DNA from: Octopus sinensis
Taxonomy: Eukaryota
Length of the DNA stretch: 52,280 nt
NCBI RefSeq assembly: GCF_006345805.1
Contig: NW_021833970.1
Coordinates: 1 to 52,280 of the forward strand
Reading direction: 5' to 3'
This document shows, one piece after another, positions 1 through 47,229 of the stretch. A program made the position numbers and the translations under genes. How positions within the stretch are numbered: the stretch's first letter is position 1; each line of letters opens with the position of its first letter. The notes beneath the pieces are model-generated. The model did no database searches, had not been told where the DNA came from, and was given only the letters and a program-made list of their open reading frames with translations.

Positions 1-35
1 AAATGACACCAACGAGATTTCCTTCTATAGATTAA
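1..35 (+). CDS. Paralogue A exon 1, 3' end (5' part outside window)
   Basis: Frame from nt 2 reads NDTNEISFYRL, matching the exon-1 ends of C (NDTNEISFYK) and D. The family GTAAGT donor is altered; GT at 36-37 keeps phase 1. Confidence 0.75.
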   Translation, partial: MTPTRFPSID

Positions 36-62: not shown

Positions 63-137
<75 letters not shown>

Positions 138-662
138 GAGTGAGAGAGCAGTTCATGCCATCAAAGTGACACTGGGGTAAAATATACGAAGCCCAATATA
201 CCCATCATGACTACCCATCTGATAAGGGTACACCAGGCACATGCATCACAACCATATGCGCGCGACATGGTGATATCATATCAAGATAAACAGCACATGA
301 CCTTGCAGGTGGGACCTAGTTAGAATTTTCTTCGGGTTGGGTAGCCCATCCCGCTCAAAAGGTCCCTGAATAAGGGTGTCTAAGGATGTTGAAAGAATCA
401 CCCATGTTTCCAGAGGTCAATTATTCAAACCCCAAAGAATCCCTCTCAACACATGGCTATGATGCTCCCCACTACTTCTGCTCGTGATCAGAGATGCACA
501 TATCGTCAGCCACTAAGGGACATGCTCAACTGGTTAAGTCAAACAACTGACAGCAAATCTGTGGTATTGAGCAGAATATTTGCTGTAGCCCATCTTTTAT
601 AACAAGACAAAACAATGTACTGATAACACTTCCAATCAGTTAAGATCAGAAGCCATGAGAGC
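138..662. mobile_element. Interspersed repeat flanked by (TTA)n, in intron 1 of A
   Basis: Reverse complement of 16097-16757; same position relative to the exon-1 donor in A and B. Confidence 0.75.
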
Positions 663-705
<43 letters not shown>

Positions 706-709
<4 letters not shown>

Positions 710-2105: not shown

Positions 2106-3742
2106 TATATAGAGAGAGATAACACGCACACACATTAATACACACACACACACACACACACATGTATGTATGTATGGATGTGTGTATGTATATATGTACA
2201 TGAACCCAGGACCATGTGTTTGGAACGTAGTTTGTTACCACGCAACCACACCTGCCCCTATGTATGTGTGTGTGTGCGTATGTGCGTATTGGTAGATATA
2301 TTATGCATGTATATATATGTATATATATGTATACATATTACATGTACATCTATATATACATCTACACATAAAATACAAAATACAAAGTTATCTTGATGTC
2401 GCTAGTGATAACAACTCAAAATATATAACAGACTGGAATTGTAGGCCCGTCTCTTGCGATTTCGATCAATTGGATCTTGTTCTCCCTCTTGTATAGAAGT
2501 ATACGGCTGCAGCGAAATTCATTTGGACTTTCTTCTATCGAAGGCATTTTAACAAAAATGCTTCCGTAAAGACGGTGAAAATATTGTCAATTTTCCCAAA
2601 CAGGGACACAATTCAATTTTTAAACAATAACAAAGCCCCTTATCCGAAGGGGGAGGGTTACGGTTTACATTATTTAACAAATGCAACACAACAACGTTTC
2701 CCTGACGCGGAACCAACAAACGTGATTATAATAGTCAAACAGTAATAATAATAACAACAAACCTCTTTAATTTATCCCCATTTATGTGAAACCATTGATG
2801 CAATTTTATACGAATTGCTAGTACACACACACATAATAAGGGTGAAAAATTGAATATTATTTGATTAATATGAATTGAAAACCAGTGATATAGCATATAA
2901 GACCATAGCGGATCTTCCTCTAGCAAAAGGATGACCAGTATTATGGTCTCATCCCTGTTATATAAATACTTGCACTTTAATTATTACACACTTGCAAAGA
3001 CCAAGTAGGAAAAGTGTGGTGGTAATGGAAGGAGTGAAGCACTTGAAATGAGAGAGGAAATCGTAAAATATTGAGTTTTCTCGAATTTTTGCTTAATTGG
3101 GCGTGAAATTGAAAAAAACTTTACATGCATGACCCAATGGAATCTACTTCGAAAAATCATAGGTAAATTCCAATTGAAGAAATTCTATATTGCACAATTG
3201 TATTAAAAACAAACTATTTGGGGCAGAGAAAATCTGCCTTTTATCATGAGATTATACAATTTTATTAAATATTTTATACACAGAGGAAAAATTCATGACA
3301 AAAATCGAATAATCGATTATAAGTAATAACCAGCCTCTCCTGTTGATGAAACCTGGATGCTTCTCTTCTCTGGCCAGCAATATCAATATTCGTAACGGAC
3401 TTTTCATAGTTACAAAACTAAGAAAATGTATGTTTAAGTAATGACTTCAAATTTATCAAAATAACGGCGTGGTACATTGACGGAGTTTTATCATTTTGAA
3501 ATACCACTATATATTCTGCTTCGTTCCATTAATATAGTATGGATTCTAATGAGCAAATCTTTATTAAAACATAGAGGTAAAAATAAATTTAAATGTTGGG
3601 TTGTCCGGAAAGTTCGTGCCGATTTTTAAAGGAAAGAAAAAGGTCAATAAATACTTGACTTAACATTTTTAATCAACCAAATATGAACCATTTTGTTGCA
3701 GAATGCGTCTCCATCTTCCTTTCACTTGAAAATTCATACATA

Positions 3743-4409: not shown

Positions 4410-4994
4410 TTGTGGTGTGGTGTGAGCGAGCATGAGTGCGTGTATGTCTACAGTGATAGATCCGAGTGTTTCATTTATTCACAATTTGATTTATTAATTT
4501 CACCGGACTATGAATACCTATAATGGTGCCTACGCAGTCGTCCACACTCATCACTGCCCTTATCAGTGGTTACAGGGAAATGATTGCGGAGTCCCTTTTT
4601 GCCTTCTGCTTTTCCTTGTCCTTTTTTGTATTTCTTCCTTTGTTTTGCCGTTTTTTTCTCGGCTTTCAATACTCCCTCAGTCATAACTGCCACTAGCAAG
4701 CTTTCCTCGCTTTAGCATATCTGTCTCATCAAGTTCCCGAGTTCGATACCTACGCAGTCTTCCACACTTATCAGTACCCTTCCTCCATTTGCCCTCTTCG
4801 TGTAGAGACGATCAGTGTCTGCACGTGGATGATGGCCTCCATGCATCATTAGACGCTTCCTTGTCTTCCTGTCCAACTCTTATCTCTCCTCCTCTGTTCA
4901 GTGAAGGATCCCAGCGCCATACCGAACTACTGCGGCTGCGCATAAGTTCATGGCCGAAATTATGTTCCAGGTATTCAGCTTTGAAGCCAATACT

Positions 4995-5379: not shown

Positions 5380-5558
5380 ACAGCCAATGGATTAAAGCAT
5401 ATGCGATATCAATGAATGCTGGTTCGAGAGTCTATGAGTCATACATGAATATAGGAAATACTTCATCCTGGAAAGTGGACAAATGCAATGGTACCTTCTG
5501 TCCTAACTTCTTCCGACATCCCTTCCTTGATTTCTGGGAACATCTTCCAATTGATGAG
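5380..5558 (+). CDS. Paralogue A exon 2
   Basis: tttcag|...GAG|gtacgt, 179 bp, phase 1/0. Encodes SQWIKAYAISMNAGSRVYESYMNIGNTSSWKVDKCNGTFCPNFFRHPFLDFWEHLPIDE; 44/59 identical to C exon 2. Confidence 0.9.
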
Positions 5559-5883: not shown

Positions 5884-7498
5884 GTGTCGTAGCTACCGTT
5901 TATAACACGCTCTAAGATTTATTATTAATAGTAATAATGATTAACAGATATTTAGATCAATTCAATTGTTTGTTACATTTTTGACCTACAAAAATGATTT
6001 ATGAGGAAGGCGAAACAGTGTTGAATAAAATTCTATCCGCGGAAAACCGCAGTAATAAGAAAAGATTATCATAGATTAAAGAATCTCCTTTTGGGGTTTG
6101 ATGAGTAAATGGGAAACAAAATCGATGAAATCAGTTTACGATTCATGACTGGTAAAAGTTTTATTGAGCTCGGCAGAAAGTAAAGCATGTGGACCTCGGT
6201 GGTACTTGGATTCAAAGCTGAATTAGTTTGTCATTCTTCTTGTGAGATGGCAAGATTGAGTAACAAACAAAACCTTGTTGGAACAGACGAATCAGGGACC
6301 TGTCAGAGCCCAGATCAAGAGCAGCCATGGATCATGGCTAGTTCAAAATTGAAATTTATTTCGTCACTGTATTTATTGCGGAGATGTGTCAATTCATAGA
6401 ATGTTTTACTCTAGATATTTCGTGTTTTCATCCACAATGGAGACGAACACCCTCCTTCCAGGTAATCGGCTTGGAAAATTGTTGACATATTAAGACATTC
6501 GCCCCTAAATGAAACTAATAATAGCCTTAATACACAAAGGGAGAAATTTTAATCAACAATGCGGTTTTGAGCGAAATACATGACCTCAGCCTGAGGTTAG
6601 CTCATCATTTTTCGGTCATTTATTTATATTCAAAAATTGCCGCTTTAAAATCGGAGATTAAATATCATTATGATATATATTATATAGAGTTATTGTACAG
6701 TTATTATACTATGAGCCTTCCATAGTAGCTTTCTCTCCGTAACTCGCAAAGCCTTTCGGGTTTACTCTTTTACTCTTTTGCATTGGTTGTCAAGAAATGC
6801 TAGGGGAACAAACACAGACATACAACCACAAACACACACACACACATATATATACATATTTACGACGGGCTTCTTTCAGTTTCCGTCTACCAAATCCAGT
6901 CACAAGGCTTTGGTCGGCCCGAGGCTATAGTAGAAGACACTTGCCCAAGATGCCACGCAGTGGGACCGAACCCGGAACCATGTGGTTGGTAAGCAAGCTA
7001 CTTACCACACAGCCACTCCTGAGCCTATATTCCTGGTATCATTACAGTAAAATCCGTAATATCCATGTACACCAGGTGAAACTTTGTTTACGTCACATAT
7101 ATGACATATATATACATATACATCTGTGTGCGTGAAAAACGTATATATATATATATATATAAATATATATTATATATATATATATTATATATATATATAT
7201 TATGTGGGGGGGGGTGTAATAGAGCTAAAAACGGATGGATTATTTGGGTATAACGACACACGTTTCCTTTCCAGAATATTGTTATTATAAACACATTATG
7301 TCATGCAACATGGAATGGAATAGCTTTGAGATCGTATGTAATACTATGAAATAAGTTTGAATAACATTACCAATTCTGTAGGTCATACTGTATTAGAGGT
7401 TAATTAGCGATGTATACCACATAGTATCATGGTAATATAGGAATTTTTCAAGTGAAGGGGTATCAAATATGTTATTTGATTCATTTAGAGATATTAAT

Positions 7499-8495
7499 CG
7501 TCTGGAAGCCGTTCAGCGACGTGCAACCGAGAGAATACCCTCCATCAGGCATTTGCCATATTCTGAACGCCTTACTTCCCTGGGCATGGACACATTGAAA
7601 CTCCAACGTCTGGCAGCTGACTTGGCAGACACCCATAAAATTATTACCCATCTTACTAACAATAACTCTGAGCACCCTTTCAAACTCTACCTGTCTAACA
7701 CCCGTGGACATTTCATTTCATTTCATTTGAGTTTGAGACCATGCTCAGGCCAAGTCGAAGACTCCACCCTCAGAGTCTGGTGTGGTTGCCAGGTTGTATT
7801 CTCTGTTTAATTTTGACATGTGTAGGAGCGAGTTTGAGTCAGTTTGTGCTCGTTGTGTATATCCTGGGAGATGGGGTTCATCTCTAATGGTGCTTAAGTA
7901 TCTATCCAGCTGCAATTTGAATGATTCCACACTGCATCCTAATAGATTTATGATATGTACTGGAATGGAGTTGAATAGTTGTGCTCCTCGAACCAACAGA
8001 CTTGATTCTCGCAGGGTTTTTGCTGCCTGGCCAGCCTTTTTGTTGATTGGTGGTAGCTGGCAGCGTCTTCCGAGGCGCAGTGAGTGGTAGGTTTTGATAC
8101 CAAAGTTTGGCACATTTTGCTCTATCATTTTCCAAATGTATATAATTCGGTATCGCTCAAATCTTCTTTCTATTGAGTACATCCTCAAGGTTTTGAGTCT
8201 TTGCCAATAGTCCAGGTCCTTCGTTTCTGAGAAGTATGAGGTAAAATTTCTTTGGAGCGATTCCATCTTAGATAGTTGGCCCTTTGTTGTTGGTGACCAC
8301 AACTGAGAACAGTAGTCAATCCTCGGAAGTATCATACTGTTCCAGAGGGTTTTCATTGTTGAGGTATCTCTTGATTTGAAGGTGCGCAAGATCCACCCGC
8401 TGACATATTTACAAAGTCAGAATATAGCACAGCTCCCATGAATTTCGGAAACATTTTTTCACGCTGACAGTTGCTGAAGCATGGAACAGACTGTG
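7499..8495. mobile_element. CR1-like LINE fragment (+) interrupted by a second CR1-like LINE 3' fragment (-, ~7714-8400)
   Basis: Outer element: INRLEAVQRRATERIPSIRHLPYSERL...NTRGH, resuming at ~8400 (KHFFTLTVAEAWNRL). Inner element: ILPRIDYCSQLWSP...ESLQRNFT with a (TGAAA)n tail. Confidence 0.85.
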
Positions 8496-8740
8496 TGTGT
8501 GTGCGTTTGTGTATGTGAGTGCGTTTGTGTGTGCGTGCGTGTGGGTGTGTGTATATTTGCGCGTGTGTGTGTGTTTGTGTGAGTGAGTTTGTGTGTCTGT
8601 GTATTTGCGTGTGCGTGTGTGTGTGTGTTTGTGTGAGTTTGTGTGTGTATGTGTGTGTGTGTTTGCGTGTGTGTGTGTGAGTGTGTGTGTGTGTACCCGT
8701 GTGTGTATGTGTGTGTGCTACATGCTCATTTCTTTTGCAG

Positions 8741-8895
8741 GTAAAACTGGTAATCTATAAAAACGGAACCGATTCGAAAACAATCATATTTGATGGACGA
8801 AATACAACCCTTAAAACCTGGTTCTCTCACGAAAACTTGAAAAGTTCACCATGGGACGACCTAGCTTCCGACCCCAGACCTAAGTTTTTAATGGA
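8741..8895 (+). CDS. Paralogue A exon 3
   Basis: ttttgcag|GTA...ATG GA|gtgagt, 155 bp, phase 0/2. Encodes VKLVIYKNGTDSKTIIFDGRNTTLKTWFSHENLKSSPWDDLASDPRPKFLM; homologous to B and C exon 3. Confidence 0.9.
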
Positions 8896-10401: not shown

Positions 10402-10562
10402 CAACAATCGTCCCTTCGTTTTATCAAAACCGGGTAATTGTAACACGATGAGTGGCTGGTTCATTGTTGATGCCCGTCCGCCAATTTGTTCGTTTGGTTA
10501 CAAAGATCATTCTCCTTCAATCCGTTATTCTGATAAAAAATTGAAAGTCGTCTGGAAGAAAG
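10402..10562 (+). CDS. Paralogue A exon 4
   Basis: ctccacag|C...AAA G|gtaagt, 161 bp, phase 2/1. Encodes NNRPFVLSKPGNCNTMSGWFIVDARPPICSFGYKDHSPSIRYSDKKLKVVWKK; same length and phase as B and C exon 4. Confidence 0.85.
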
Positions 10563-10596
10563 GTAAGTGATATTTTTATTTTGTGTGTGTGAGAGT

Positions 10597-10644
<48 letters not shown>

Positions 10645-10837
10645 GTGTGTGCGCACGTGCGCGTGTATATGTTTGTGTATATGCGTATTTATGTGTGTGA
10701 GCCTTGATTCAACTGATTTATTATTAAAAGCGTTCCGACCATGACCCTCCTGTATGTTTCAGGCGTGAACGCGTACGAAGACCTTCCATGATTTATTTCC
10801 ATTCTTTGGTTATTGATGTTGTTATTGTTACTTGCAG

Positions 10838-10887
10838 GTTATGCATTAGCAGACTCCATGGCCATATTCATCCGCCTGAGGGAGTAG
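10838..10887 (+). CDS. Paralogue A exon 5 (terminal)
   Basis: cttgcag|GT TAT...GAG TAG, 50 bp. Encodes (G)YALADSMAIFIRLRE*; matches C exon 5. Confidence 0.85.
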
Positions 10888-11853: not shown

Positions 11854-12014
11854 CGTCGTTCCATACGATTTTCATTTTTGTGTCAGAATAACGGATTGAA
11901 GGAGAATGATCTTTGTAACGAAACGAATAAGATGGCGGAAGCTCATCGATAACCAGCCAGCCGCTTACTTTTGTACTTGTGTTGCCTTTTGTTATATAGA
12001 AGCTATATTTTCAT
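11854..12014 (-). pseudogene. Paralogue B exon 4 with in-frame stop
   Basis: ttcacag|A TGA AAA TAT...GAC G|gtaagt, 161 bp. TGA at 12013-12011, then KYSFYITKGNTSTKVSGWLVIDELPPSYSFRYKDHSPSIRYSDTKMKIVWND. Confidence 0.8.
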
Positions 12015-12244: not shown

Positions 12245-12408
12245 TTATTTAGCTCCACTGAGAAACGCAATTTTGTGGCTGAAGCTAGATCGTCCCATGG
12301 TGAACTTTTCAAATTTTCCTGAGAGAACCAGGTTTTAAGGGTTGTATTTCGTCCATCAAATATCATAGTTACCACATCTGTTTGGTTTTCGTAGAGCACC
12401 AGTTTCAC
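12245..12408 (-). pseudogene. Paralogue B exon 3
   Basis: cttctgcag|GTG...AAT AA|gtat, 164 bp. Encodes VKLVLYENQTDVVTMIFDGRNTTLKTWFSQENLKSSPWDDLASATKLRFSVELN; open, with splice sites intact. Confidence 0.85.
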
Positions 12409-14020: not shown

Positions 14021-14650
14021 AGAGCTAATCATCATATCTATAAAAGAGTGGATGTGTGCGCGCGCGTGTGTGTGTGTGTGTGTGTGCACATGATTGTAAT
14101 TTACGCACATCCACAAATTAGCACGCATGTCGCTCAAATTTTAGGAGGACATTTGTCAACATCCTATCTGGGTTTTGTCAACTTATGTTTTTCCCGAGGC
14201 ACCCGCGGATAGGGTGAAAATCTATTTTCAACCATTTTCAACCAGTTGTCCCCAGGTGTAGTCGTCTGTTACTTCTTCATTTTCTGTTGACATTTTCCAT
14301 GTTGTTTTCCATCCGTGACGCTTCTGTCTCCCTTGGTATATATCCTTTGGATGGTTTGTCTGGTAAAATCAGAAAGAGGTTTTCAAGCGATGTGTCCTAG
14401 CTAACCTCATTTTCTGCTCTTGATCTGGGCTCTGACAGGTTCCTGGTTCGTCTGTTCCCACAAGGTTTTGTTTGTTACTCAATCTTGCCATCTCCCAAGA
14501 AGAATGACAAACTAATTCGGCTTTGAATCCAAGTACCACCGAGGTCCACATGCTTTACTTCCTGCCGAGCTCAATAAAACTTTTACCAGTCATGTATCGT
14601 AAGCTGATTTCATCGACTTTGTTTCCCATTTACTCATCAAACCCCAAAAG

Positions 14651-15480
14651 CCGAGAAAAAAACGGCAAAACAAAGGAAGAGATACAAAAAGGACAAGGAA
14701 AAGCATAAGGCAAAAAGGGACTCCGCAATCATTTCCCTGTAACCACAAAAGAAGTTGTTGGAAAACATAGGTGGGATTGGCTGAAAAAAGGGACAGTGAA
14801 AAAAGGGACTGACAGCATTATACTGGCAGCACATAATCATGGTTTGCCCACGAATTCGAGGGTCAACCTTAGGAATGAGCAAGTGGCTCCGCTGTGCCGC
14901 ATCTGTAATAGAGTGGACGAAATCCTTGTTCATATCACTTACGAATGGCCTAGACTTGTGAAGAATCACCACAAGTTGTGGCGACACAATTAGGTAGAGA
15001 AAGTACGACGTTGGAAAGTGCGCGGAAAGTTGGGGTTAGAGAGAGGCAAGACGTGGCATGAGAACAAATTGCAGAGAATGATGGAGCCGGAGTATAGCAA
15101 AATCCTCTGAGATTTCCACATCCAAACAAATCAGGTGCTAGAGCGTAACAGAGTGGATCAAGTGGTTGCCGACTAGATGCACCACATGTGCTACATGGCT
15201 GATGTTGCGTGCCCCTTTGATCCGCGAGTAATCAACAAGGAAGGCGAAAAGAATAGATACATACAACCCTCTGAAGTGCGAAATATTCTAGCTATGGAAA
15301 CTGAAGCAGGTGAAAAATAGTGCCAATCATTGAGGGGTTCTTAGGGACAGTATCAGAAGACTGGAATACTCGCGGAGTGAATGTACGAAAATCTGGAAAT
15401 AAATGGTGTCCTGCCACATGAGCAGAAGAGTTGCAATTTTTTTGCAGACTATTATGTGGCTTGAAAATGCTTTGCATACC
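14651..15480 (+). mobile_element. Degenerate restriction-like-endonuclease LINE, C-terminal fragment
   Basis: PLCRICNRVDEILVHIT zinc-knuckle-like motif and KIL*DFHIQT...RVDQVV...MADVACPFD endonuclease-like motif, with stops. Confidence 0.7.
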
Positions 15481-16782: not shown

Positions 16783-17113
16783 TTCTGTAGAAGGACATCT
16801 CGTTGCTGTCATTCGTGCTGACAACTGTCATTATATTTTTCGGTGAGTAATTCTTACAAACATGGCTGACATTGTTGTAAGTGAAGAATTCCGATTGGCT
16901 GCTTAGAGAAATCGCGGCACATTTCAGTAGACATCGAGTGGAGGAGAATTGTTCTGTCGGAGGTTCCTGAAGGTAACGGTAGGAATACCCAGGAGCCAAA
17001 GATCTGTAGCTGCCTGTATAAAACTCCTGGTTTGAGGCAACGGTCAGAATTGTAGTAAGGGTTAATAGCAGCACTGTGGTCACGGTTGGAATGGTAGAAG
17101 GAAACTGGAACAT
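16783..17113 (-). pseudogene. Paralogue B exon 1: signal peptide + PAN/apple-like domain (open exon of a probably defective copy)
   Basis: ATG at 17113; hydrophobic N-terminus (TVLLLTLTTILTVAS); ends SFYR A|gtaagt (331 bp, phase 1). Exon 2 is missing downstream. Confidence 0.85.
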
Positions 17114-18929
17114 CTTGGCTCTAGAATCAGAAGAGGACTGCGTTTATAAATAAGTGTGCGCGCATATGTGTGTGTGTGTGTGTGAGCATGTGTGTTTATG
17201 TTAGAAGATGAGGGAGAAAATTTAGAGAGAGGAGGAGAGGAAGATAAAAATTCAAAAGTGGGAGAGGTAAAGAGAAAGAGACTGTAGAGAAATTGATAGA
17301 GAGATAGAAATAGGGAGAAATAGGGAGAAATCGACGATGGTATAAGGAGAGAGAGAAAGAGGAAGGGATAAGGGGGAGATGTAAAAAGAATGACTAACAG
17401 ATTAAAGAGAGTGAGAGTCATCAGAGAGAGAGAGAGAGAAGTAGAGGAGAGCATAGAATAGAGAGGGGAAGAGAATAGGTACGAGATAGCTAGAAATAGA
17501 TAGTAATACAGAGAAGGGACGAGATAAAGGAAGAGATGAAGTGCAAGAGATATATTTGTCAGGAGAAATGAAAGTAGAAAAGCTAATAGAGAATATCTGA
17601 ATTAAAAAATAGGATGGTCACGGCTGGTATATCTTTGACTGAAGAACCGTTCGATCAGGCCCGATCTGGCGCAAAATGATGACGCTAACAACAACAAACA
17701 CACAAACGAAAATAACAACATGATAATACATTCATAACAAGCGTATTTTTTAATATATGTTCTGATGGCCACGGTCGAAACGGCTTTGATCATAGATCTG
17801 CTTAATCGCTACTGACCAAGTGTTAAACAGCAAGAAATATCGTCGCTCCCTTCTCCAAAGAAACACATCATAAAGTCTGACTCGAGCCTCCAGGCCGGAG
17901 CTTATTCAGGTTGCCAAGCGTTATAGTGGGCCCTTCTCCAGCTAACAGTTGTACTTATTTTCAATAGAGTGGAGAAAATTGAAGTATCTTGCCGAAGGGT
18001 TCAATGCACCACCCGATTCAGAAGTCACAATCTTTTGCGCGTGAGTGAGCTCGAGACGTTAACCGCCACACCACGTACCATAATCCTAAATCTAACAAAC
18101 TCATGCGCTCGCGCACATGCATACACACACGCACACAGGCTCACACATACACACACACGCACAAATGTAATCTTACCTTTGTTGTGGGTAGAGGCAGTGA
18201 TTTTGCTATTCACGGGCAACGAGAGATGTTGTCAGGTCTGTCCACTATGACCGTCCAGTCACAAAATATGAAGGATGTCCACAAATGCCGCTTTCAGAAT
18301 TACCACAGATGTCACCACTGTCTCTAGATGTCAAGTCAGGACCCTTACGAATGCCAATATTGTTTACTGCATTCAAATGTTACAGAGGCCGACTTATCCT
18401 TTTTTCCTTTCAGGCTCAATAAAACAAGTAGTAGCTGAGCAGTGGGGTTCATATGATCAACTAGCCCTTTCCTGCAAAATTTCAGATCCTGTGTTTATAG
18501 TAGAAAGAATATTATCTACTGCTTCCAGAATAACCACAGAGGTCGGCACTGTCTCCAGACATCAATCCAGAGTTCCTACAGATGAAAATATTACCACTGT
18601 CTCTACAAGTGAAACAGGAGCGCAGGTTTTCGAACTGTTCACTGATAGCAGGACTGCTCGCTTCTTTCACCAGTATCTGCAGCTACGACAACTCTATATT
18701 ATGGTCAATAACATACGCAGTGAGAACAACACTTCCCATTTATGATATTATGCTTTCACCCACACTGAACTAAACTAGTGTCTCACATGAATACGAACAG
18801 TCACACTATACTGAGCACATTAGCTTCTTTCAATGGGATGTGTTCGATATTGCTGTTGGCTGTGGCGGTATTGTTGGTGCGTTTGTTGTGATAGTAACGA
18901 CTGATGTAGTGAAGATATGAGTGTGTATA

Positions 18930-24505: not shown

Positions 24506-24827
24506 ATGTCCCATTTTACCCGTCCATCTGTTACGAGAGCGCTGTTGTTGACCCTTACAACAATTCTGACCGTTACCTCAGGTCAGGAACTTGAGGCCTA
24601 CTACAAAGCTTTGGATCCTGGTTATTCTTATGGTTATCTTCAGGCAAATCCATCGGAAAAATTCTATAAGAGAAAAAGTCTACTGGGATGTGCCGGCATC
24701 GCTCTAAGCAGCCAATCAGAATTCTTTACTTACAACAAAGTCAGCCATGTTTGTAAGAATTACTCACCGAAAAATATAATGACAGTCGTCAGCACGAATG
24801 ACACCAACGAGATTTCATTCTATAAAA
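24506..24827 (+). CDS. Paralogue C exon 1: signal peptide + PAN/apple-like domain
   Basis: ATG after caaga as in D; MSHFTRPSVTRALLLTLTTILTVTSG...SFYK A|gtaaga, 322 bp. In-frame upstream ATGs at 24479 and 24494 are possible alternatives. Confidence 0.9.
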
Positions 24828-28453: not shown

Positions 28454-28632
28454 ACAGCCAATGGATCAAAGCATATGCCCTGTCAATGGGCGCTGGTACC
28501 GACGTCTATCATTCATTTATAAATAAAGGAGATTCTTCAACCTGGAACGTGGACAAATGCAATGGTGCCTTTTGTCCTAACTTCTTCCGACATCCTATTC
28601 TCGATTTCTGGAGTCATCTTCCAATTGATGAG
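28454..28632 (+). CDS. Paralogue C exon 2
   Basis: tttcag|AC...GAG|gtacgt, 179 bp. Encodes SQWIKAYALSMGAGTDVYHSFINKGDSSTWNVDKCNGAFCPNFFRHPILDFWSHLPIDE. Confidence 0.92.
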
Positions 28633-29833: not shown

Positions 29834-29994
29834 GTGAAACTAGTGGTTTATAAAAACCAAACAGCTGTAGCTAATATCGTGTTCGATGGACGTAATACAA
29901 CCCTTGAAAGCTGGTTTTCTCATGAAAAGTTGAAAAGTTCTCATTGGACCGACTTAACTCAAAGCCATGTGGCTTACTTCTCACTCGGACAGAA
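29834..29994 (+). CDS. Paralogue C exon 3
   Basis: tttttag|GTG...CAG AA|gtaatt, 161 bp. Encodes VKLVVYKNQTAVANIVFDGRNTTLESWFSHEKLKSSHWTDLTQSHVAYFSLGQ. Confidence 0.9.
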
Positions 29995-31315: not shown

Positions 31316-31476
31316 TTGGGGACGTCGTTTCTACGTGTGGTCTTACGAAGAAAGTTGTGAAACAGATATGGGTTGGATGGCTATTACTCAAATGAGTTGG
31401 TGTGACTGGGAGAAGAATCTTCCTTTGCCGACAATACTCTACTCAGGGAAAAGTTCGACAACCACATTTAATGAAG
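31316..31476 (+). CDS. Paralogue C exon 4
   Basis: ttacag|T TGG...GAA G|gtaagt, 161 bp. Encodes WGRRFYVWSYEESCETDMGWMAITQMSWCDWEKNLPLPTILYSGKSSTTTFNE. Confidence 0.88.
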
Positions 31477-32790: not shown

Positions 32791-33341
32791 TAGTAGTAGT
32801 AGTAGTATCTTGTACTCGCATAAGACTAAATTTAAACATGGATATATTAGTCCAGTGCTTCTCAACCGGAGTCCATTTGAACCCTTGTGGTCCTTATGAG
32901 AATTTTGGTACTTTATGCATGCAAAATAGTAAATTGGGATCCTTGAATGTTCTCCTCCGTGAGACATATCCTTGCATGTTTGTTTATGGAAGGCCAGCAG
33001 TCGCCCATGTCTGCCAGCCTCTCCTCTCCGCGCTCTCGATGTTACCCAAAGGAAAAGCAAAGGGACCGATACAGCCTGGCACCAATGACCTCGCAACTCA
33101 TTTCTACAGCTGAAATGAACTGAAGCAAGGCACATATTGTTCAAAACACGATGGAAAATTTTGGCACGAGGCCAGTAATTTCGGGGGAAAGGGTTAAGTC
33201 GATAACATCGAGCAGAGCACTCGATTTTTACTTATTTTATCGACCCCGAAAGGATGAAAGGTAAAGTAGACCACGGCAGAATTTGAACTTAGAACCTAAA
33301 GACTTATGAAATACTGCTAAGCATTTTCCGCGGTAACGATT

Positions 33342-33625
33342 TTGCCAGCTCACCGCCTTAACACGAAGGAAAATATTGCGGCACAAAATATAGAATTTTT
33401 ATCTCATCCGCCTCATTCTTCTGGTTTTGCTCCATCTGACTACCAACTTTTCAAACCATTGCAACGGTATTTAGATAGCAAACATTTTGTCAATTGTGAT
33501 GAGGACGCAAATTGTATTGAATGGTGGTTCTTTGCTTCGCAAGATGAAAGCGATTACGCCCCAAGTCTTAACTATTTTCCAAATAGACAGGATTATGTCA
33601 TCAATAGTGAAGGGAAATATTGATT
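33342..33625 (+). mobile_element. Mariner transposase C-terminal remnant
   Basis: HPPHSSGFAPSDYQLF corresponds to mariner HPPYSPDLAPSDYHLF; ends VINSEGKY. Confidence 0.8.
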
Positions 33626-33931: not shown

Positions 33932-33981
33932 GTTTGGAAATAGGTGATTCCATGGCCATCTTCATCCGCCTAAAACCTTAA
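33932..33981 (+). CDS. Paralogue C exon 5 (terminal)
   Basis: tttttcag|GT TTG...CCT TAA. Encodes (G)LEIGDSMAIFIRLKP*. Spliced CDS 322+179+161+161+50 = 873 nt = 290 aa + stop, with no internal stop. Confidence 0.88.
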
Positions 33982-36232: not shown

Positions 36233-36411
36233 CTCTTCGATGGGAAGATCGCTCCAGAAATCGAGAATAGGATTTCGGAAGAAGTTAGGACAAAAGGTAT
36301 CGACGCATTTCTCTACTTCCCAGGTTGAAGGACTTCCTATATTCATAAATGATTCATAGACTTTCGAACCAGCTCCCATTGATAGGGCATATGCTTTGAT
36401 CCATTGACTGT
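36233..36411 (-). pseudogene. Paralogue D exon 2
   Basis: tttcag|AC AGT CAA...GAG|gtacgt, 179 bp, open. Encodes SQWIKAYALSMGAGSKVYESFMNIGSPSTWEVEKCVDTFCPNFFRNPILDFWSDLPIEE. Confidence 0.85.
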
Positions 36412-37479: not shown

Positions 37480-40400
37480 AAATTTATTTTCGAAACGAAA
37501 TGATGTATTTTGACTCGATATCATCTCCACCTCTAACACAACACATGTAAACATGCGTGTTACATTACGATCCATCCACACCAGATCATCCCCGACCCCA
37601 AACACCATGTACAAAGGAACTACGAAGAAATTAAATACCACCGATATTATTCAACCCAAAAATAACAATCGGGAGGTACGTACCTTAAGCTTACAACACA
37701 AAATGTACGAAAAACTACACGTGCAAAACAATGTGACAACAGAAATGAACGGACCGGTACCCTACGAAAATGACGACCGTCAAAATAATGGGCCGGACGT
37801 TGTTCCTCATGTCCCGCAGATAAAACCCAAAAGACATAAATGGACACGTAAGGAATACATTTCTATCCTACACGCATACTTCACAGCAGTGCTCTACCCC
37901 AAAAATGTAAAACACAACAACACATACATATAAAATATGGAAGAAAAATAACATAAATATAGACTTGGATACAGCAATGAACCCTAATAAAATAGCTAAC
38001 GTACGAAGATACATTCTCAAAAAAAAAAAATCAGAAATAGAAATAGAACATCTAAAAGAAAAAAATACACCAGGAAAATGTAGATAGAAGCCACACAGCG
38101 ATGCCCATTAATATAACACTGAAACAATAAAACACGATGACAAACGTAACATTCCCAACAAAAACGATATAAATAAAAACAACAAACCCAGACCGTAAAA
38201 ATCCATAATAATACACGACAAACAGCAAGCCAAAACACGACAAACAAACATATAAATAAGAAAGAAAGCGACACAAATCTAAAACCTAGAGACAACAAGG
38301 GGGAGCCTAATGATTATGATAATATAAAAAGTAAAATAATCAAAGAACTGAAAACCACAGAGCTCAAAATGGACCACCGACCATATCTCCCAAAAATCAA
38401 AATATACGAAACAACAACACCAATTATAAACAGCATAAACCTAGCCTTCACTGAACTAATAGCCACTGAAACAAAAAGCGATATCACTAAGCTAAATTAC
38501 TTAGTTTACGCAGCAGCCACTGCATCCACAAAAGAAGCTGGATACTCACTCAAACCCATCCAAACAGGAGTACCACAACCCAAACAAACCCTGTGGATAA
38601 ATAACATCCAAAACAAAATACAAAAAATGAGAAAAGATCTGTCGATTCTTAATGAAATCAGTAGACAATCAACGCTACTGAGCAACAAAAGAAAACAAAA
38701 ATACTCCGCAAATATAACATCACAGAAAAAGATTTACCTGAGATAAAAGAAAAGCTGAAGCAAGATATCCTTGCCAAAGCACAAAGGATCCGCCGGTACG
38801 AGAAACGCCAGCGCTTCTTTGAACAAGACAAAAAGTTCAACTCCAACCACAAAAAGTTCTACCAAGTACTTGGCAAAAATAAAAATAAAATAGAAATCAC
38901 TGCAGCACCAACGGCAGAAGAAGTGGAAGAATTCTGGAGAGAAATATGGTCGACGAACGAACAACAAAAAGAAGAAGTATCAAACAACAAACTCAGCATC
39001 TGAGCAACTTTGGACCCCCATAACAACTGAAGAGGTCACCCAGGCACTGCAAAGACTAAGCAACTGGAAGGCACCTGGGCATGACAAGATCCCCAACTTC
39101 TGGTTGAAATATCTAACAGGAATGCACAAAAAGCTGGCTGAAAACTTTAACAGCATGCTAGCAGAGCCAGAGACAATGCCTGAATGGCTCACGAAGGGGA
39201 AAACCATCTTAATTCCCAAATCAAATGAGACAGCAAAACCAGAAAACTACAGACCAATAACCTGTCTCCCTACAATATAGAAGGCACTTACTGCAGTGAT
39301 ATCGCAAAGGTTAAACAAGCACTTGGACGAAAACAGCCTGTTTCCAGAAGAGCAGATATGATGCCGCAAAGGCTTATATGGCTGTAAAGATCGACTAATG
39401 ATTAATAAAGCCATAACTAAAGACAGCCACAGAAAGAAGAAAGGCCTCAGTATGGCCTGGATCGATTACAAAAAGGCGTTTGATAGCATCCCCCACACAT
39501 GGATCCTCGAAACACTAGCCATTAACAAAGTAGCACCAACCCTTATAAAATTCACAGGGCACTCTATGAATAAATGGCAAACCGTACTACAGCTCCAAAC
39601 AAAAGAGGGACTCATGAAAACCAAAGCTATCACCATTAGAAGAGGTATATTCCAGGGAGACACTCTCTCTCCACTCCTTTTCTGCTTGGCACTGTCACCT
39701 CTATCTGATATGCTAAATAGAATTGGATGCGGATATAAATGTTACGGCAAAACGATCAGCCACCTTTTATATATGGATGACCTAAAACTATACGCTGCAA
39801 ATGACAAACAGCTGGAAACACTATTAAAGACAGTTCATGGATTTACCAAAGAAATAGAAATGAAATTTGGATTAGAAAAATGCGCCAAAGTAACCATGAA
39901 AAGAGGAAAACTAGTTAAGAGTAGCAACATCACACTAGATAAAACCAATGAAATAAAAGAATTAGACCAAAGCCAAACTTACAAATACTTAGGAATCCAT
40001 GAACTAGATAAGACACAACACACACAAATGAAAGAGAAAATAAAAAAAGAATATTATAGACGAGTTAGATCAATACTAAAAACAGAGCTCAATGCTAAAA
40101 ACAAGATAATAGGTATTAACACTTTAGCTGTCCCAGTTATAAGTTACAGCTACAATATCCTTAACTGGACACTAAATGAACTGACCAAAATAGATAGGAA
40201 AACAAGAAAAATAATGACAGGGTCTAGGATGCATCACCCAAAATCTTACATAGAAAGACAATATATATACAACGTATAGAAGGTGGTAGAGGCCTTATAC
40301 AACTGGATAACTACTATAAAATAACCACCATAGGACTTCAAAAATATCTACTTCAGAAGGAAGGGAAAACTGATACACATAACGGCAAAACACGAGCAAA

Positions 40401-46193: not shown

Positions 46194-46521
46194 TTTTATA
46201 GAATGAAATCTCGTTGGTGTCATTCGTGCTGACGATTGCCATTATATTCTTCGGTGAGTAATTCTTACAAACACGACTCACTTTGTTGTAAGTAAAGAAT
46301 TCTGATTGGCTGCTTAGAGCGAGGCCGGCACATTCCAGCAGACTTCGTGTTGAATAGGATATTTCCGATGGTGATGACTGAAGGTAACCATAAGAGTAGC
46401 CAAGAGGCAAACGTTCGTAGCTTGCTTCACGTTCCTGATCTGAGCTAACAACCAGAATGGTTGCAAGAGTTAACAGAAGCACTGTTATCACAGCAGGATG
46501 GGTAAAAGGAAACCGGGACAT
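46194..46521 (-). pseudogene. Paralogue D exon 1: signal peptide + PAN/apple-like domain (3'-truncated copy)
   Basis: MSRFPFTHPAVITVLLLTLATILVVSS...SFYK A|gtaagt, 328 bp, open. Status depends on exons 3-5, which I did not find. Confidence 0.8.
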
Positions 46522-47229
46522 TCTTGGCTCTATAATTGCTAGAGGGAGAAAGAAAGAGAAAAGAAATTATATGAAAGAGAATGAGAGAGAGAGAGAGAGA
46601 GAGATTCGGCAAAGTGGCGAAAAGAAATTTAATATATAAAGGAAGAAGGGGTAAGAGGGTACGAGTGATGATGGGAAACTGTTAGAGAGTAACAGGGAGA
46701 AATCCTGAAAGAAAAGAGGAAAATAAATTAAGAAATTGAGAAAATGGAAAATTGCTGTGAGATTGTTGTGGGGACGCCCCCTGACGACAAAGTAGGCTAG
46801 CCCAGTACGTAGAGTATAGAGGGAGAAGCCTAGACGTCAGCAGCACAGCTGAGTAGCAATCGGAGAGTCGTAGTAGAACAGAGCAGAGGAGAGTTGTGTA
46901 GAAGGCATCCGAACGTGCGGCATAACAGAGATGCAGAAAGTGTGCATAAGAAAACGGAATAGAAATAAATTACAATTTAGAATAGAAAAATTCAAATAAA
47001 TTAGGGTAATTAGTAATAACGCAGGTCCTGGTTATGATTTTAAACTGCTTCCAGTAGTGAACTCTGGTTGGGGATTTCTAGGGTTTTAATGAGTTTGGAA
47101 TCACTCCTTAGCCACTGATGTTCCTCTGTCTACTCTCATCCAGAATCGAAGTAATCATCAGGATTCAAATAATGGGTTAATTAGCAATTACGTCGATCAT
47201 ATGGCGCTCATTACCCTAGTGTTCGTGGT

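What the first reader, a model, noticed from the sequence alone, without database searches (positions are those of the whole stretch)
10402..10562. Exon 4 is a hypervariable cassette with conserved length, phase and cysteines
Seen: A vs C exon 4 share ~12 of 53 residues (~23%, two 1-aa gaps; R.F, C, GW, C, P.I.YS kept), whereas exon 2 is 44/59 identical and exon 5 shares DSMAIFIRL. A's version is Lys/Arg-rich and C's (31316-31476) is acidic and Trp-rich. Inference: exon 4 forms a ligand-specificity surface on a constant scaffold, diversified by positive selection or exon swapping from a distant paralogue.
Basis: partly seen in the sequence, partly recalled or inferred. Interest (0 to 1): 0.7.

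Follow-up and report, generated by a model that had tools for sequence, protein, structure and literature searches.

The report
Fast-evolving binding-loop exon in octopus lectin-like genes
Exon 4 of these octopus genes encodes the fastest-changing part of a secreted, distantly fibrinogen/intelectin-like protein family. In some gene lineages it changes faster than neutral DNA, as expected of a recognition surface under diversifying selection, but no ligand is known.

Summary
The window is an Octopus sinensis scaffold carrying four copies (A, B, C, D) of an unannotated, octopod-expanded secreted family. Exon 4 of A (10402-10562) and of C (31316-31476) are both 161 nt, share phase and AG/GT sites, and are 12-14/52 identical. 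Exon 2 is 44/59 identical. Among 26 family members exon 4 is the least conserved exon in 96-98% of pairs.

- **For it:** in two independent close gene pairs, exon 4 changes 3-4 times faster at nonsynonymous sites than the flanking introns (p about 1e-6), with omega 1.0-1.7. Other exons give omega about 0.4.
- **For it:** my own M2a vs M1a test is significant (p 1e-4 to 1e-3). The selected sites flank the two conserved cysteines and fall in predicted loops.
- **Against a discrete cassette:** variability already starts in the last ~12 codons of exon 3.
- **Against exon-4 swapping:** no donor was found. Recombination separates exons 1-2 from exons 3-5, and this inflates the A-C contrast (dS 0.35 vs 1.2).
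- **Against continuous hypervariability:** C's exon 4 is identical in O. vulgaris.

The fold is only distantly fibrinogen/intelectin-like, and ligand binding is inferred, not shown.

The parts
1..35 (+). Gene A, 3' end of exon 1 (cut by the window start; ...NDTNEISFYRL)
   Evidence: tblastn and sequence reading
5380..5558 (+). Gene A exon 2 (SQWIKAYA...LPIDE), conserved
   Evidence: 44/59 identical to C
8741..8895 (+). Gene A exon 3; its last ~12 codons already belong to the variable zone
10402..10562 (+). Gene A exon 4 (the finding): 161 nt, encoding the variable region that carries the two conserved cysteines
   Evidence: Against its closest copy A' it shows 25/159 nt differences where introns show 5.8%. 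M2a sites are 8, 10-12, 14, 16, 25, 28, 30
10838..10887 (+). Gene A exon 5 (G)YALADSMAIFIRLRE plus stop
11854..12014 (-). Copy B exon 4, pseudo-exon: TGA as first full codon and both cysteines replaced (S, Y)
12248..12408 (-). Copy B exon 3
16783..17143 (-). Copy B exon 1 region (signal peptide, Cys-rich PAN-like part, MTVVSTNDSNEMSFYR). Exon 2 is deleted between here and exon 3
   Evidence: A:4667-6087 has no counterpart in B
24506..24827 (+). Gene C exon 1 (signal peptide plus PAN/apple-like part)
28454..28632 (+). Gene C exon 2
29834..29994 (+). Gene C exon 3. Its 3' tail (about 29963-29984) carries 6 nonsynonymous differences from the O. vulgaris orthologue
31316..31476 (+). Gene C exon 4: 161 nt, acidic and Trp-rich version, identical in O. 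vulgaris
33932..33981 (+). Gene C exon 5 plus stop
46194..46524 (-). Copy D exon 1
   Evidence: P0041
36233..36411 (-). Copy D exon 2; no exons 3-5 found downstream

Best explanation
Exon 4, together with the last ~12 codons of exon 3, encodes the variable part of a secreted protein of about 296 aa. The protein consists of a signal peptide, a PAN/apple-like Cys-rich module and a divergent fibrinogen/intelectin-like globular domain. The variable part is two loops around a conserved pair of cysteines, presumably a disulfide. The genes belong to a tandemly duplicated family known so far only from octopods (Octopus, Argonauta).

The region diversifies through episodic positive selection on the residues that flank the two cysteines. 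The strands and framework residues (RRF, GW, P, YS, W) stay fixed. At the same time, duplication, loss and recombination or gene conversion between paralogues keep exons 1-2 similar among neighbours. As a result the 5' and 3' halves of a gene have different histories.

Shown here:
- the exon-specific excess of nonsynonymous change over intron divergence;
- the site-class test;
- the mosaic history of the gene halves;
- the position of the selected sites in predicted loops.

Inferred: that the loops bind a ligand (lectin-like or pattern recognition), and that the two cysteines form a disulfide.
For: Family-wide pattern:
- Exon 4 is the least conserved exon in 96-98% of 325 pairs.

Close pair A vs A' (A' is on O. 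sinensis scaffold L001):
- Introns differ at 5.8% over 3510 nt.
- Exon 2 differs at 5/177 nt, exon 3 at 7/153, exon 4 at 25/159.
- Exon 4 dN is 0.194 and omega 1.70; dN/intron is 3.2 (p=6e-6).
- The 262 nt directly upstream of exon 4 have only 10 mismatches.

Other pairs in the A lineage:
- A vs Avul: exon 4 dN/intron 4.2 (p=8e-7).
- A' vs Avul: 15 N to 1 S.
- Polarised trio: 26 N to 5 S, where the intron rate predicts 8.8 N (p=2e-6). Three of the 5 S changes sit in multi-hit codons.

Independent lineage P0020 vs P0045:
- Exon 4 omega 1.56, dN/intron 3.5 (p=3e-6); other exons omega about 0.4.

Pooled and model-based tests:
- Five pairs pooled: omega 1.10 in exon 4 against 0.41 elsewhere (p=7.5e-4).
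- M2a vs M1a on exon 4: 2dlnL 13.9-18.0 (p 1e-3 to 1e-4). The control exons give p=0.75 and omega 0.47.

Structure:
- Selected sites 8, 10-12, 14, 16 and 25, 28, 30 map to loops 141-147 and 155-168, between strands, in the pLDDT 87.8 model.
- Foldseek top hits are almost all intelectins, ficolins, ANGPTL, FGL1 and fibrinogen.
- A bridging protein has the Pfam Fibrinogen_C N-terminal part directly followed by this domain.

Mosaic history.
Against: - The codon-model code is my own, and the data sets are small (5-7 sequences, 53 codons).
- Single-pair omega values are not individually significantly above 1.
- Synonymous differences in exon 4, counted by NG86, also exceed the intron expectation (12.5 against 5.1, p=0.007). 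Conversion from unsampled paralogues or clustered multi-nucleotide mutation could therefore contribute.
- The acceleration is absent in C vs Cvul (0/159) and in P0012 vs P0017 (omega 0.51).
- Fold matches are weak (E 1e-3 to 0.3, TM 0.3-0.42) and there is no Pfam match.
- No expression or binding data exist.
- No model coordinates were available, so burial of the variable residues could not be computed.
- A and A' may be diverged haplotypes rather than paralogues.
Confidence: 0.6

Rival explanations
1. Mosaic age only. The A-C contrast arises because exons 1-2 were recently homogenised by gene conversion or recombination between neighbouring paralogues. Exons 3-5 keep an old divergence, and exon 4 has no acceleration of its own.
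For: - A vs C dS is 0.22 (exon 1) and 0.35 (exon 2), against 0.98, 1.22 and 0.93 for exons 3-5.
- A and B are 96-97% identical in introns 1-2 but 77-79% around exons 3-4.
- P0011 and P0012 are 97% identical in exon 1 but 34% in exon 4. P0009 and P0010 are 58% in exon 1 but 94% in exons 3-4.
- Mantel ex1-ex4 r=0.19 and ex2-ex3 r=0.17, both non-significant.
- In P0012 vs P0017 it is exon 2 that is the outlier (dS 0.67).
Against: - Within the old module, exon 4 is still far more diverged than exons 3 and 5: dN 0.87 against 0.33 and 0.28 at similar dS.
- In close collinear pairs whose flanking introns are 94-96% identical, only exon 4 is in excess.
- This process is real and contributes, but it cannot be the whole explanation.
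Confidence: 0.2
2. Templated micro-conversion or local hypermutation. Short tracts of exon 4 are overwritten from diverged exon-4 copies elsewhere in the genome, or hit by clustered mutation, without selection for novelty.
For: - Differences cluster in runs: 9 changes in codons 6-15 on the A branch, and a 3-nt change in one codon on the Avul branch.
- Exon-4 synonymous counts exceed the intron expectation.
- (GT)n tracts lie next to exon 4 in all A/B-type copies.
- The family clearly recombines.
Against: - No donor for the derived tracts exists in the window or in the eight loci fetched (L001-L008). Apart from isolated 11-12-nt matches that look like chance, only the conserved block (exon-4 positions 85-131) is shared with other copies.
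- Derived states are mostly unique.
- Only 2 isolated synonymous changes occur in the trio, where 2.3 are expected.
- The N:S ratio is biased (26:5; 15:1).
- Only a small part of each genome could be searched.
Confidence: 0.12
3. Relaxed constraint or decay. Exon 4 is simply unconstrained, or the genes are dying, so it drifts neutrally.
For: - Copy B is a pseudogene: exon 2 deleted, TGA in exon 4, cysteines lost.
- D lacks exons 3-5.
- Many database models are truncated after exon 3.
- M0 omega is about 1.
Against: - Nonsynonymous divergence is 3-4 times the intron rate, which neutrality cannot produce.
- M1a is rejected in favour of M2a.
- Framework residues and the reading frame are kept in the intact copies examined.
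- C's exon 4 has 0/159 changes where 3.8 are expected (p=0.02).
Confidence: 0.06
4. Alternative-splicing cassette. Several exon-4 variants within one gene are used in a mutually exclusive way, as in Dscam.
For: - The NCBI model P0041 joins D exons 1-2 to B exon 3 across gene C.
- The NCBI gene ranges of P0009 and P0010 span 100-240 kb.
Against: - Each gene copy has exactly one exon 4 between its exon 3 and exon 5.
- No tandem exon-4 array occurs in the window or in the eight loci.
- Skipping exon 4 shifts the frame, since 161 nt is not a multiple of 3.
Confidence: 0.02

Closest known systems
Fibrinogen-related domain lectins (ficolins, tachylectin-5, mollusc FREPs) and intelectins
   Same: - Secreted globular domain; Foldseek's best matches are to these proteins.
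- A C...GW...C segment sits in the C-terminal third and a hydrophobic last strand ends the domain. From memory, this resembles the P-subdomain disulfide loop that forms the ligand site in ficolins and tachylectin-5.
- Multigene expansion and sequence diversification in molluscs.
- One relative (P0097) starts with a true Fibrinogen_C N-terminal part.
   Different: - No Pfam Fibrinogen_C match and no PDB sequence match.
- TM-scores are only 0.3-0.42.
- In the octopus proteins, the position of the canonical N-terminal subdomain (with its CDM..GGGW motif) is occupied by the exon 1 tail and exon 2 sequence, and a PAN/apple-like module precedes the domain.
- No IgSF domains, unlike Biomphalaria FREPs, and no collagen stalk, unlike ficolins.
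- Calcium and acetyl-binding residues were not identified.
Exon-specific accelerated evolution in secreted multigene families (for example cone-snail toxin genes, where a conserved signal exon accompanies a hypervariable mature-peptide exon with conserved cysteines)
   Same: - One exon evolves faster than its introns while neighbouring exons are conserved.
- The cysteine framework is kept.
- Tandem duplication.
   Different: - Here the fast part is a pair of loops inside a folded domain of about 200 aa, not a small peptide.
- Omega is modest (about 1 overall; roughly 20% of sites at 4-7) and episodic.
- There is no evidence of a venom role.
Concerted evolution with escape of recognition exons (MHC and KIR-type loci; birth-and-death multigene families)
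   Same: - The 5' module is homogenised among neighbours.
- The recognition-like module stays divergent.
- Pseudogenes and half-genes lie in the array.
   Different: - Allelic versus paralogous status was not resolved.
- No function is known.
- Invertebrate, unrelated fold.

Membership tests
Fibrinogen-related domain (Pfam PF00147 Fibrinogen_C) | Match to the Pfam model above its gathering score | tested here: not met
   No Pfam family matched the concatenated exon 2+4+5 peptides of A and C (exons 1 and 3 left out), nor the full-length family member P0009.
Fibrinogen-related domain (Pfam PF00147 Fibrinogen_C) | Same fold as solved FReD structures | tested here: inconclusive
   The AF2 model has pLDDT 87.8. 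About 44 of the top 50 Foldseek PDB hits are intelectin, ficolin, ANGPTL, FGL1, fibrinogen or tenascin. However, E is 1e-3 to 0.3 and TM 0.3-0.42.
Fibrinogen-related domain (Pfam PF00147 Fibrinogen_C) | Sequence continuity with canonical FReDs through intermediate proteins | tested here: inconclusive
   P0097 has two tandem units. Each starts with Fibrinogen_C profile positions 2-60 (35 and 32 bits; cutoff 22) and continues with this domain where the B and P subdomains would lie. The Pfam model does not extend into that part.
Fibrinogen-related domain (Pfam PF00147 Fibrinogen_C) | P-subdomain disulfide around a GW(W) motif, plus Ca2+ and ligand pocket residues | tested here: inconclusive
   Two invariant Cys flank an invariant GW. 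Their equivalence to the FReD P-domain disulfide rests on memory of the motif. Pocket and calcium residues were not identified.
PAN/Apple domain (N-terminal module) | Pfam PAN_1 match or apple-domain fold | tested here: inconclusive
   - P0009 has no Pfam hit.
- A profile hit to the Toxoplasma MIC4 apple domains has E=0.07.
- Foldseek gives prob 0.9 but short matches to MIC4 and plasminogen PAN.
- Crinoid relatives carry Pfam PAN_1.
- UniRef names P0019 an 'Apple domain-containing protein'.
Biomphalaria-type FREPs | One or two IgSF domains upstream of the fibrinogen domain | tested here: not met
   No Ig domain appears in the Pfam scan, and the N-terminal module is PAN-like.
Mutually exclusive exon cassette arrays (Dscam-like) | Several tandem alternative copies of the exon inside one gene | tested here: not met
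   There is one exon 4 per gene copy in the window and in loci L001-L008.
Genes under diversifying selection | A site class with omega >1, or dN above the neutral rate | tested here: met
   - dN/intron is 3.2-4.2 in the A lineage and 3.5 in the P0020 lineage.
- M2a vs M1a gives p 1e-4 to 1e-3, and the control exons are negative.
- The test is not met in the C or P0012 lineages.

The most novel reading that the evidence does not exclude
A and A' (and B and P0011) are not paralogues but deeply diverged haplotypes of one locus, partly shared with O. vulgaris. Exon 4 would then be a balanced, trans-species polymorphic recognition segment in a cephalopod. Alternatively, the exon is diversified by templated conversion from a hidden reservoir of exon-4 copies. 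Either reading would make this a new invertebrate system of recognition-molecule diversification built on a previously unannotated fibrinogen-like domain.
Probability: 0.12. Interest if true: 0.8.

Novelty: new variant of a known kind. Interest (0 to 1): 0.5.

Why it matters
Cephalopods have no adaptive immunity, and few candidate diversified recognition molecules are known from them (my own knowledge; two literature searches here found nothing on this family). This is an unannotated secreted family with these properties:
- It has no Pfam domain and no paper that I could find.
- Its globular domain has more than 1,000 representative clusters; the named ones I looked up are from amphioxus, crinoids and bivalves.
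- In octopods it has expanded into gene clusters that include tail-to-tail pairs.
- In some lineages it evolves faster than neutral DNA in two cysteine-flanked loops.

It therefore offers a concrete set of candidate pattern-recognition or other recognition proteins, with defined variable positions that can be swapped and tested. It is also a practical warning for annotation. Many database models of this family stop after exon 3 or skip exon 4, probably because that exon is too divergent for homology-guided gene prediction.

Tried and rejected
- **Pfam scan** of the A and C peptides and of P0009: nothing.
- **PDB sequence search** with the narrow (A1) and wide (A2) family profiles: only a marginal apple-domain hit.
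- **First AF2 model** of full-length P0009 with 17 sequences: mediocre (pLDDT 70), with weak Foldseek matches. It was replaced by a domain model built from 77 sequences.
- **Third protein-database search** with C's exon 4-5 peptide, meant to find C-type relatives or donors: no candidates, not even the known orthologue, so it is uninformative.
- **DNA look-ups** for P0009 and P0010: failed because their annotated gene ranges are 100-240 kb.
- **Literature searches** for the locus names and for octopus fibrinogen-related proteins: nothing on this family.
- **My recollection** that coral 'skeletal organic matrix protein 5' carries this domain: could not be checked and is not used.
- **Donor search** for the derived exon-4 tracts by 11-mer matching in all fetched loci: negative.
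- **Dscam-like cassette array:** rejected, because each gene has a single exon 4.
- **Weak exon-4-like tblastn hit** at window 3325-3411 (also present in O. vulgaris intron 1): judged spurious.
- **Burial of variable residues:** could not be computed because model coordinates are not returned.

Full report
**What the window is**

The sequence is eukaryotic, with introns and many microsatellites. One database protein, P0041 (LOC118761633 of Octopus sinensis), is recorded on a contig of exactly 52,280 bases. The window is therefore an unplaced O. sinensis scaffold.

tblastn with family proteins and direct reading of splice sites give four copies of one gene family.

| Copy | Strand | Exons found |
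|---|---|---|
| A | + | exon 1 cut by the window start; exon 2 5380-5558; exon 3 8741-8895; exon 4 10402-10562; exon 5 10838-10887 |
| B | - | exon 1 about 16783-17143; exon 3 12248-12408; exon 4 11854-12014 |
| C | + | complete: 24506-24827, 28454-28632, 29834-29994, 31316-31476, 33932-33981 |
| D | - | exons 1 and 2 only: 46194-46524, 36233-36411 |

In full-length relatives the exon that holds 'MTVVSTND' also encodes a signal peptide and a Cys-rich module of about 70 aa.

**Checking the observation**

Both exon 4 copies are 161 nt and are bounded by AG and GT. Each begins with one nucleotide of a split codon and ends with one.

A vs C identity is 44/59 in exon 2, 30/51 in exon 3, 12-14/52 in exon 4 and 9/15 in exon 5. 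Exon 4 differs significantly from exon 2 (Fisher p=6e-8) and from exon 3 (p=3e-4).

**The family**

Relatives with names are all 'uncharacterized' proteins of O. sinensis, O. vulgaris, O. bimaculoides and Argonauta. None has a precomputed Pfam domain, and a Pfam scan found nothing.

A profile search of 1.8 billion representative proteins found 1,132 relatives of the C-terminal ~180-aa domain at E<=1e-3. Those I looked up come from amphioxus, crinoids and bivalves. In them the domain is often embedded in extracellular multi-domain proteins with ZP, EGF, TSP1, F5/8C, PAN and C-lectin modules.

An AF2 model of P0025, built with a 77-sequence alignment, is confident (pLDDT 87.8, pTM 0.85). P0025 is the O. 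vulgaris orthologue of C, and its exon 4 has the same amino-acid sequence. Foldseek against the PDB returns almost only intelectins, ficolins, angiopoietin-like proteins, FGL1, fibrinogen and tenascin FBG domains. The scores are weak, however: E 1e-3 to 0.3 and TM 0.3-0.42.

One relative, P0097, has two tandem units. Each starts with a genuine Pfam Fibrinogen_C N-terminal segment and continues with this domain. The N-terminal module gives marginal apple/PAN matches.

I therefore call the protein 'PAN-like plus divergent fibrinogen/intelectin-like'. Membership of the FReD family is unproven.

**Is exon 4 special across the family?**

Yes. In an alignment of 26 octopod members the mean pairwise identity per exon is as follows.

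| Exon | Mean pairwise identity |
|---|---|
| 2 | 0.69 |
| 3 | 0.61 |
| 4 | 0.41 |
| 5 | 0.66 |

Exon 4 is the lowest in 96-98% of 325 pairs. Kept in exon 4 are RRF, the first Cys, GW, the second Cys, P, YS and W.

High column entropy already begins about 12 residues before the end of exon 3. The variable zone is therefore not bounded by the exon.

Exon 4 is 161 nt in the A, B and C types but 164 nt in P0012/P0017.

**Selection or age? Close pairs with their introns**

I fetched DNA for paralogues and orthologues.

Scaffold L001 of O. sinensis carries a copy, A', that is collinear with A through introns and exons. Results for A vs A':
- Aligned introns differ at 5.8% (3,510 nt).
- Exon 2 differs at 5/177 nt, exon 3 at 7/153, exon 4 at 25/159 (19 of 53 residues).
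- Exon 4 dN is 0.194, dS 0.114 and omega 1.70; dN is 3.2 times the intron divergence (p=6e-6).
- The 262 nt immediately upstream of exon 4 have only 10 mismatches (Fisher p=2e-5 against the exon).
- Among intron windows of the same size, only a microsatellite stretch is as divergent.

The same holds for other comparisons:
- A vs the O. vulgaris copy Avul: introns 4.0%, exon 4 24/159, dN/intron 4.2, p=8e-7.
- A' vs Avul: 15 N to 1 S.
- Polarising the trio gives 26 N and 5 S changes, spread over all three branches. The intron rate predicts 8.8 N (p=2e-6). Three of the five S changes lie in codons with several hits.
- An independent lineage, P0020 of O. sinensis vs P0045 of O. vulgaris, repeats the pattern: introns 5.5%, exon 4 26/159, omega 1.56, dN/intron 3.5 (p=3e-6), other exons omega about 0.4.
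- Pooled over five independent pairs, omega is 1.10 in exon 4 and 0.41 elsewhere (p=7.5e-4).

**Codon models**

I wrote a GY94-type likelihood implementation with models M0, M1a and M2a. Results for the A/B-type clade:

| Data set | M0 omega | Tree length | M2a vs M1a |
|---|---|---|---|
| Exon 4 | 0.93-0.99 | 2.3-2.9 | 2dlnL 18.0 (7 taxa), 16.1 (5 taxa), 13.9 (6 taxa, without the possible pseudogene); p 1e-4 to 1e-3 |
| Exons 2+3+5, control | 0.47 | 0.69 | p=0.75 |

In the M2a fits, 19-26% of exon-4 sites have omega 4-7.

Sites with posterior above 0.8 are 8, 10, 11, 12, 14 and 16, which flank Cys13, and 25, 28 and 30, which flank Cys29. In the AF2 model these correspond to loops 141-147 and 155-168, between beta strands. 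This fits exposed loops held by a disulfide. I could not compute solvent exposure because coordinates are not returned.

**The acceleration is episodic**

- C and its O. vulgaris orthologue differ at 2.4% in 7,706 intron positions but at 0/159 in exon 4 (probability of zero under neutrality 0.02).
- Their only cluster of change is six nonsynonymous differences within 22 nt at the 3' tail of exon 3.
- P0012 vs P0017 gives omega 0.51 in exon 4.

The extreme A-C difference is therefore an old divergence, with dS about 1.2 and close to saturation. It is not ongoing change in C.

**Exon swapping and mosaicism**

The family is clearly mosaic, but the boundary is not around exon 4.
- In the window, A and B are 96-97% identical through introns 1 and 2 but only 77-79% around exons 3 and 4.
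- Identity between A and P0011 falls from 91-94% at the 5' end to 74-76% at the 3' end.
- At protein level, P0011 and P0012 are 97% identical in exon 1 and 34% in exon 4. P0009 and P0010 are 58% in exon 1 and 94% in exons 3-4.
- P0012 and P0017 look orthologous in exons 3-5 but not in exon 2, where dS is 0.67 against an intron value of 0.115.
- Mantel correlations are 0.65 for exon 3 vs exon 4, but 0.17-0.24 between the 5' exons (1 and 2) and exons 3 and 4.
- For A vs C, dS is 0.22-0.35 in exons 1-2 and 0.9-1.2 in exons 3-5.

Against exons 3 and 5, of similar age, exon 4 still has about three times the dN.

I found no donor for exon 4 of C: the best identity to any non-orthologous member is about 0.42. 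I also found no donor for the derived tracts in A, A' or Avul within the fetched loci. Unsampled donors cannot be excluded, because no tool here can search whole octopus genomes.

**Other copies**

B is a pseudogene:
- The 1.4 kb that contain exon 2 in A are missing.
- The first full codon of exon 4 is TGA.
- Both cysteines are replaced.
- No exon 5 was found.

Its O. vulgaris orthologue also lacks exon 2 and both cysteines, but keeps the exon-4 frame open.

D has only exons 1-2. The NCBI model P0041 splices them to B's exon 3 across gene C.

**Verdict**

The finding is a real, statistically solid feature. Its most likely meaning is a variable recognition region under episodic diversifying selection. 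It sits in a previously undescribed, distantly fibrinogen/intelectin-like secreted family, and it is overlaid on a recombining tandem array.

The 'cassette swapped from a distant paralogue' idea is not supported for exon 4 on its own. Function is inferred, not shown.

Noticed in passing
window 11854-12014, 12248-12408, 14640-14655, 16783-17143 (- strand): Copy B is a pseudogene. Exon 2 is deleted (A:4667-6087 has no counterpart), TGA is the first full codon of exon 4, both cysteines are replaced, and no exon 5 was found. The O. vulgaris orthologue (L005 21769-21927) shares the Cys losses, and no exon 2 was found there either, but its exon 4 is still open.
   Followed up: partly
window 36233-36411 and 46194-46524 (- strand): Copy D has only exons 1-2. 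It aligns with C at 80-85% from exon 1 through intron 1 to exon 2. The NCBI model LOC118761633 (P0041) joins these exons to B's exon 3, 24 kb away, across the oppositely oriented gene C. This is either a prediction artefact or trans-copy splicing.
   Followed up: partly
window 29963-29984 (3' tail of C exon 3): Six nonsynonymous differences fall within 22 nt between C and its O. vulgaris orthologue (SHVAY..L vs RNEAS..I). Exons 2, 4 and 5 have none, and introns differ at 2.4%. This is a second small hot spot, in the part of exon 3 that is variable family-wide.
   Followed up: partly
window 120-706, 4566-4666, 6088-6324 vs 16774-16056, 14746-14414: Introns 1-2 of the tail-to-tail neighbours A and B are 96-97% identical, while their exon 3-4 regions are 77-79% identical. 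This points to recent homogenisation or recombination of the 5' half between inverted neighbours.
   Followed up: partly
window 8428-8735 and 10571-10700; also L001, L004, L005 next to exon 4: Long (GT)n-rich tracts lie just upstream of A's exon 3 and just downstream of exon 4. The tract after exon 4 is present in all A/B-type copies examined. It might promote recombination or conversion, but this was not tested.
   Followed up: no
window 39398-40279 (+), 7745-8389 (-), 33321-33620 (+): Transposon remnants lie inside introns: a LINE-type reverse transcriptase ORF (YMDD motif) in D's intron 1, an RT C-terminal fragment in A's intron 2, and a mariner/Tc1-like transposase fragment in C's intron 4. 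They were identified by eye from the translations only.
   Followed up: no
database proteins P0006, P0008, P0048, P0037, P0043 and others: Many predicted proteins of this family stop after exon 3, or skip exon 4 and read exon 5 out of frame ('ISRLHGHIHPPE...'). This suggests that gene predictors often miss the divergent exon 4.
   Followed up: partly
P0097 (ENA metagenome protein, 2257 aa): This protein has a lipoprotein-like signal peptide, FG-GAP repeats and MopE motifs, so it looks bacterial. It ends in two tandem units that combine a Fibrinogen_C N-terminal part with this domain. A possible bacterial occurrence of the domain was not examined.
   Followed up: no
NCBI gene ranges of P0009 and P0010 on O. 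sinensis CM016888.1: The annotated genes span 243 kb and 101 kb and enclose other family members. The cluster annotation is tangled: isoforms either share distant exons or the models are chimeric.
   Followed up: no
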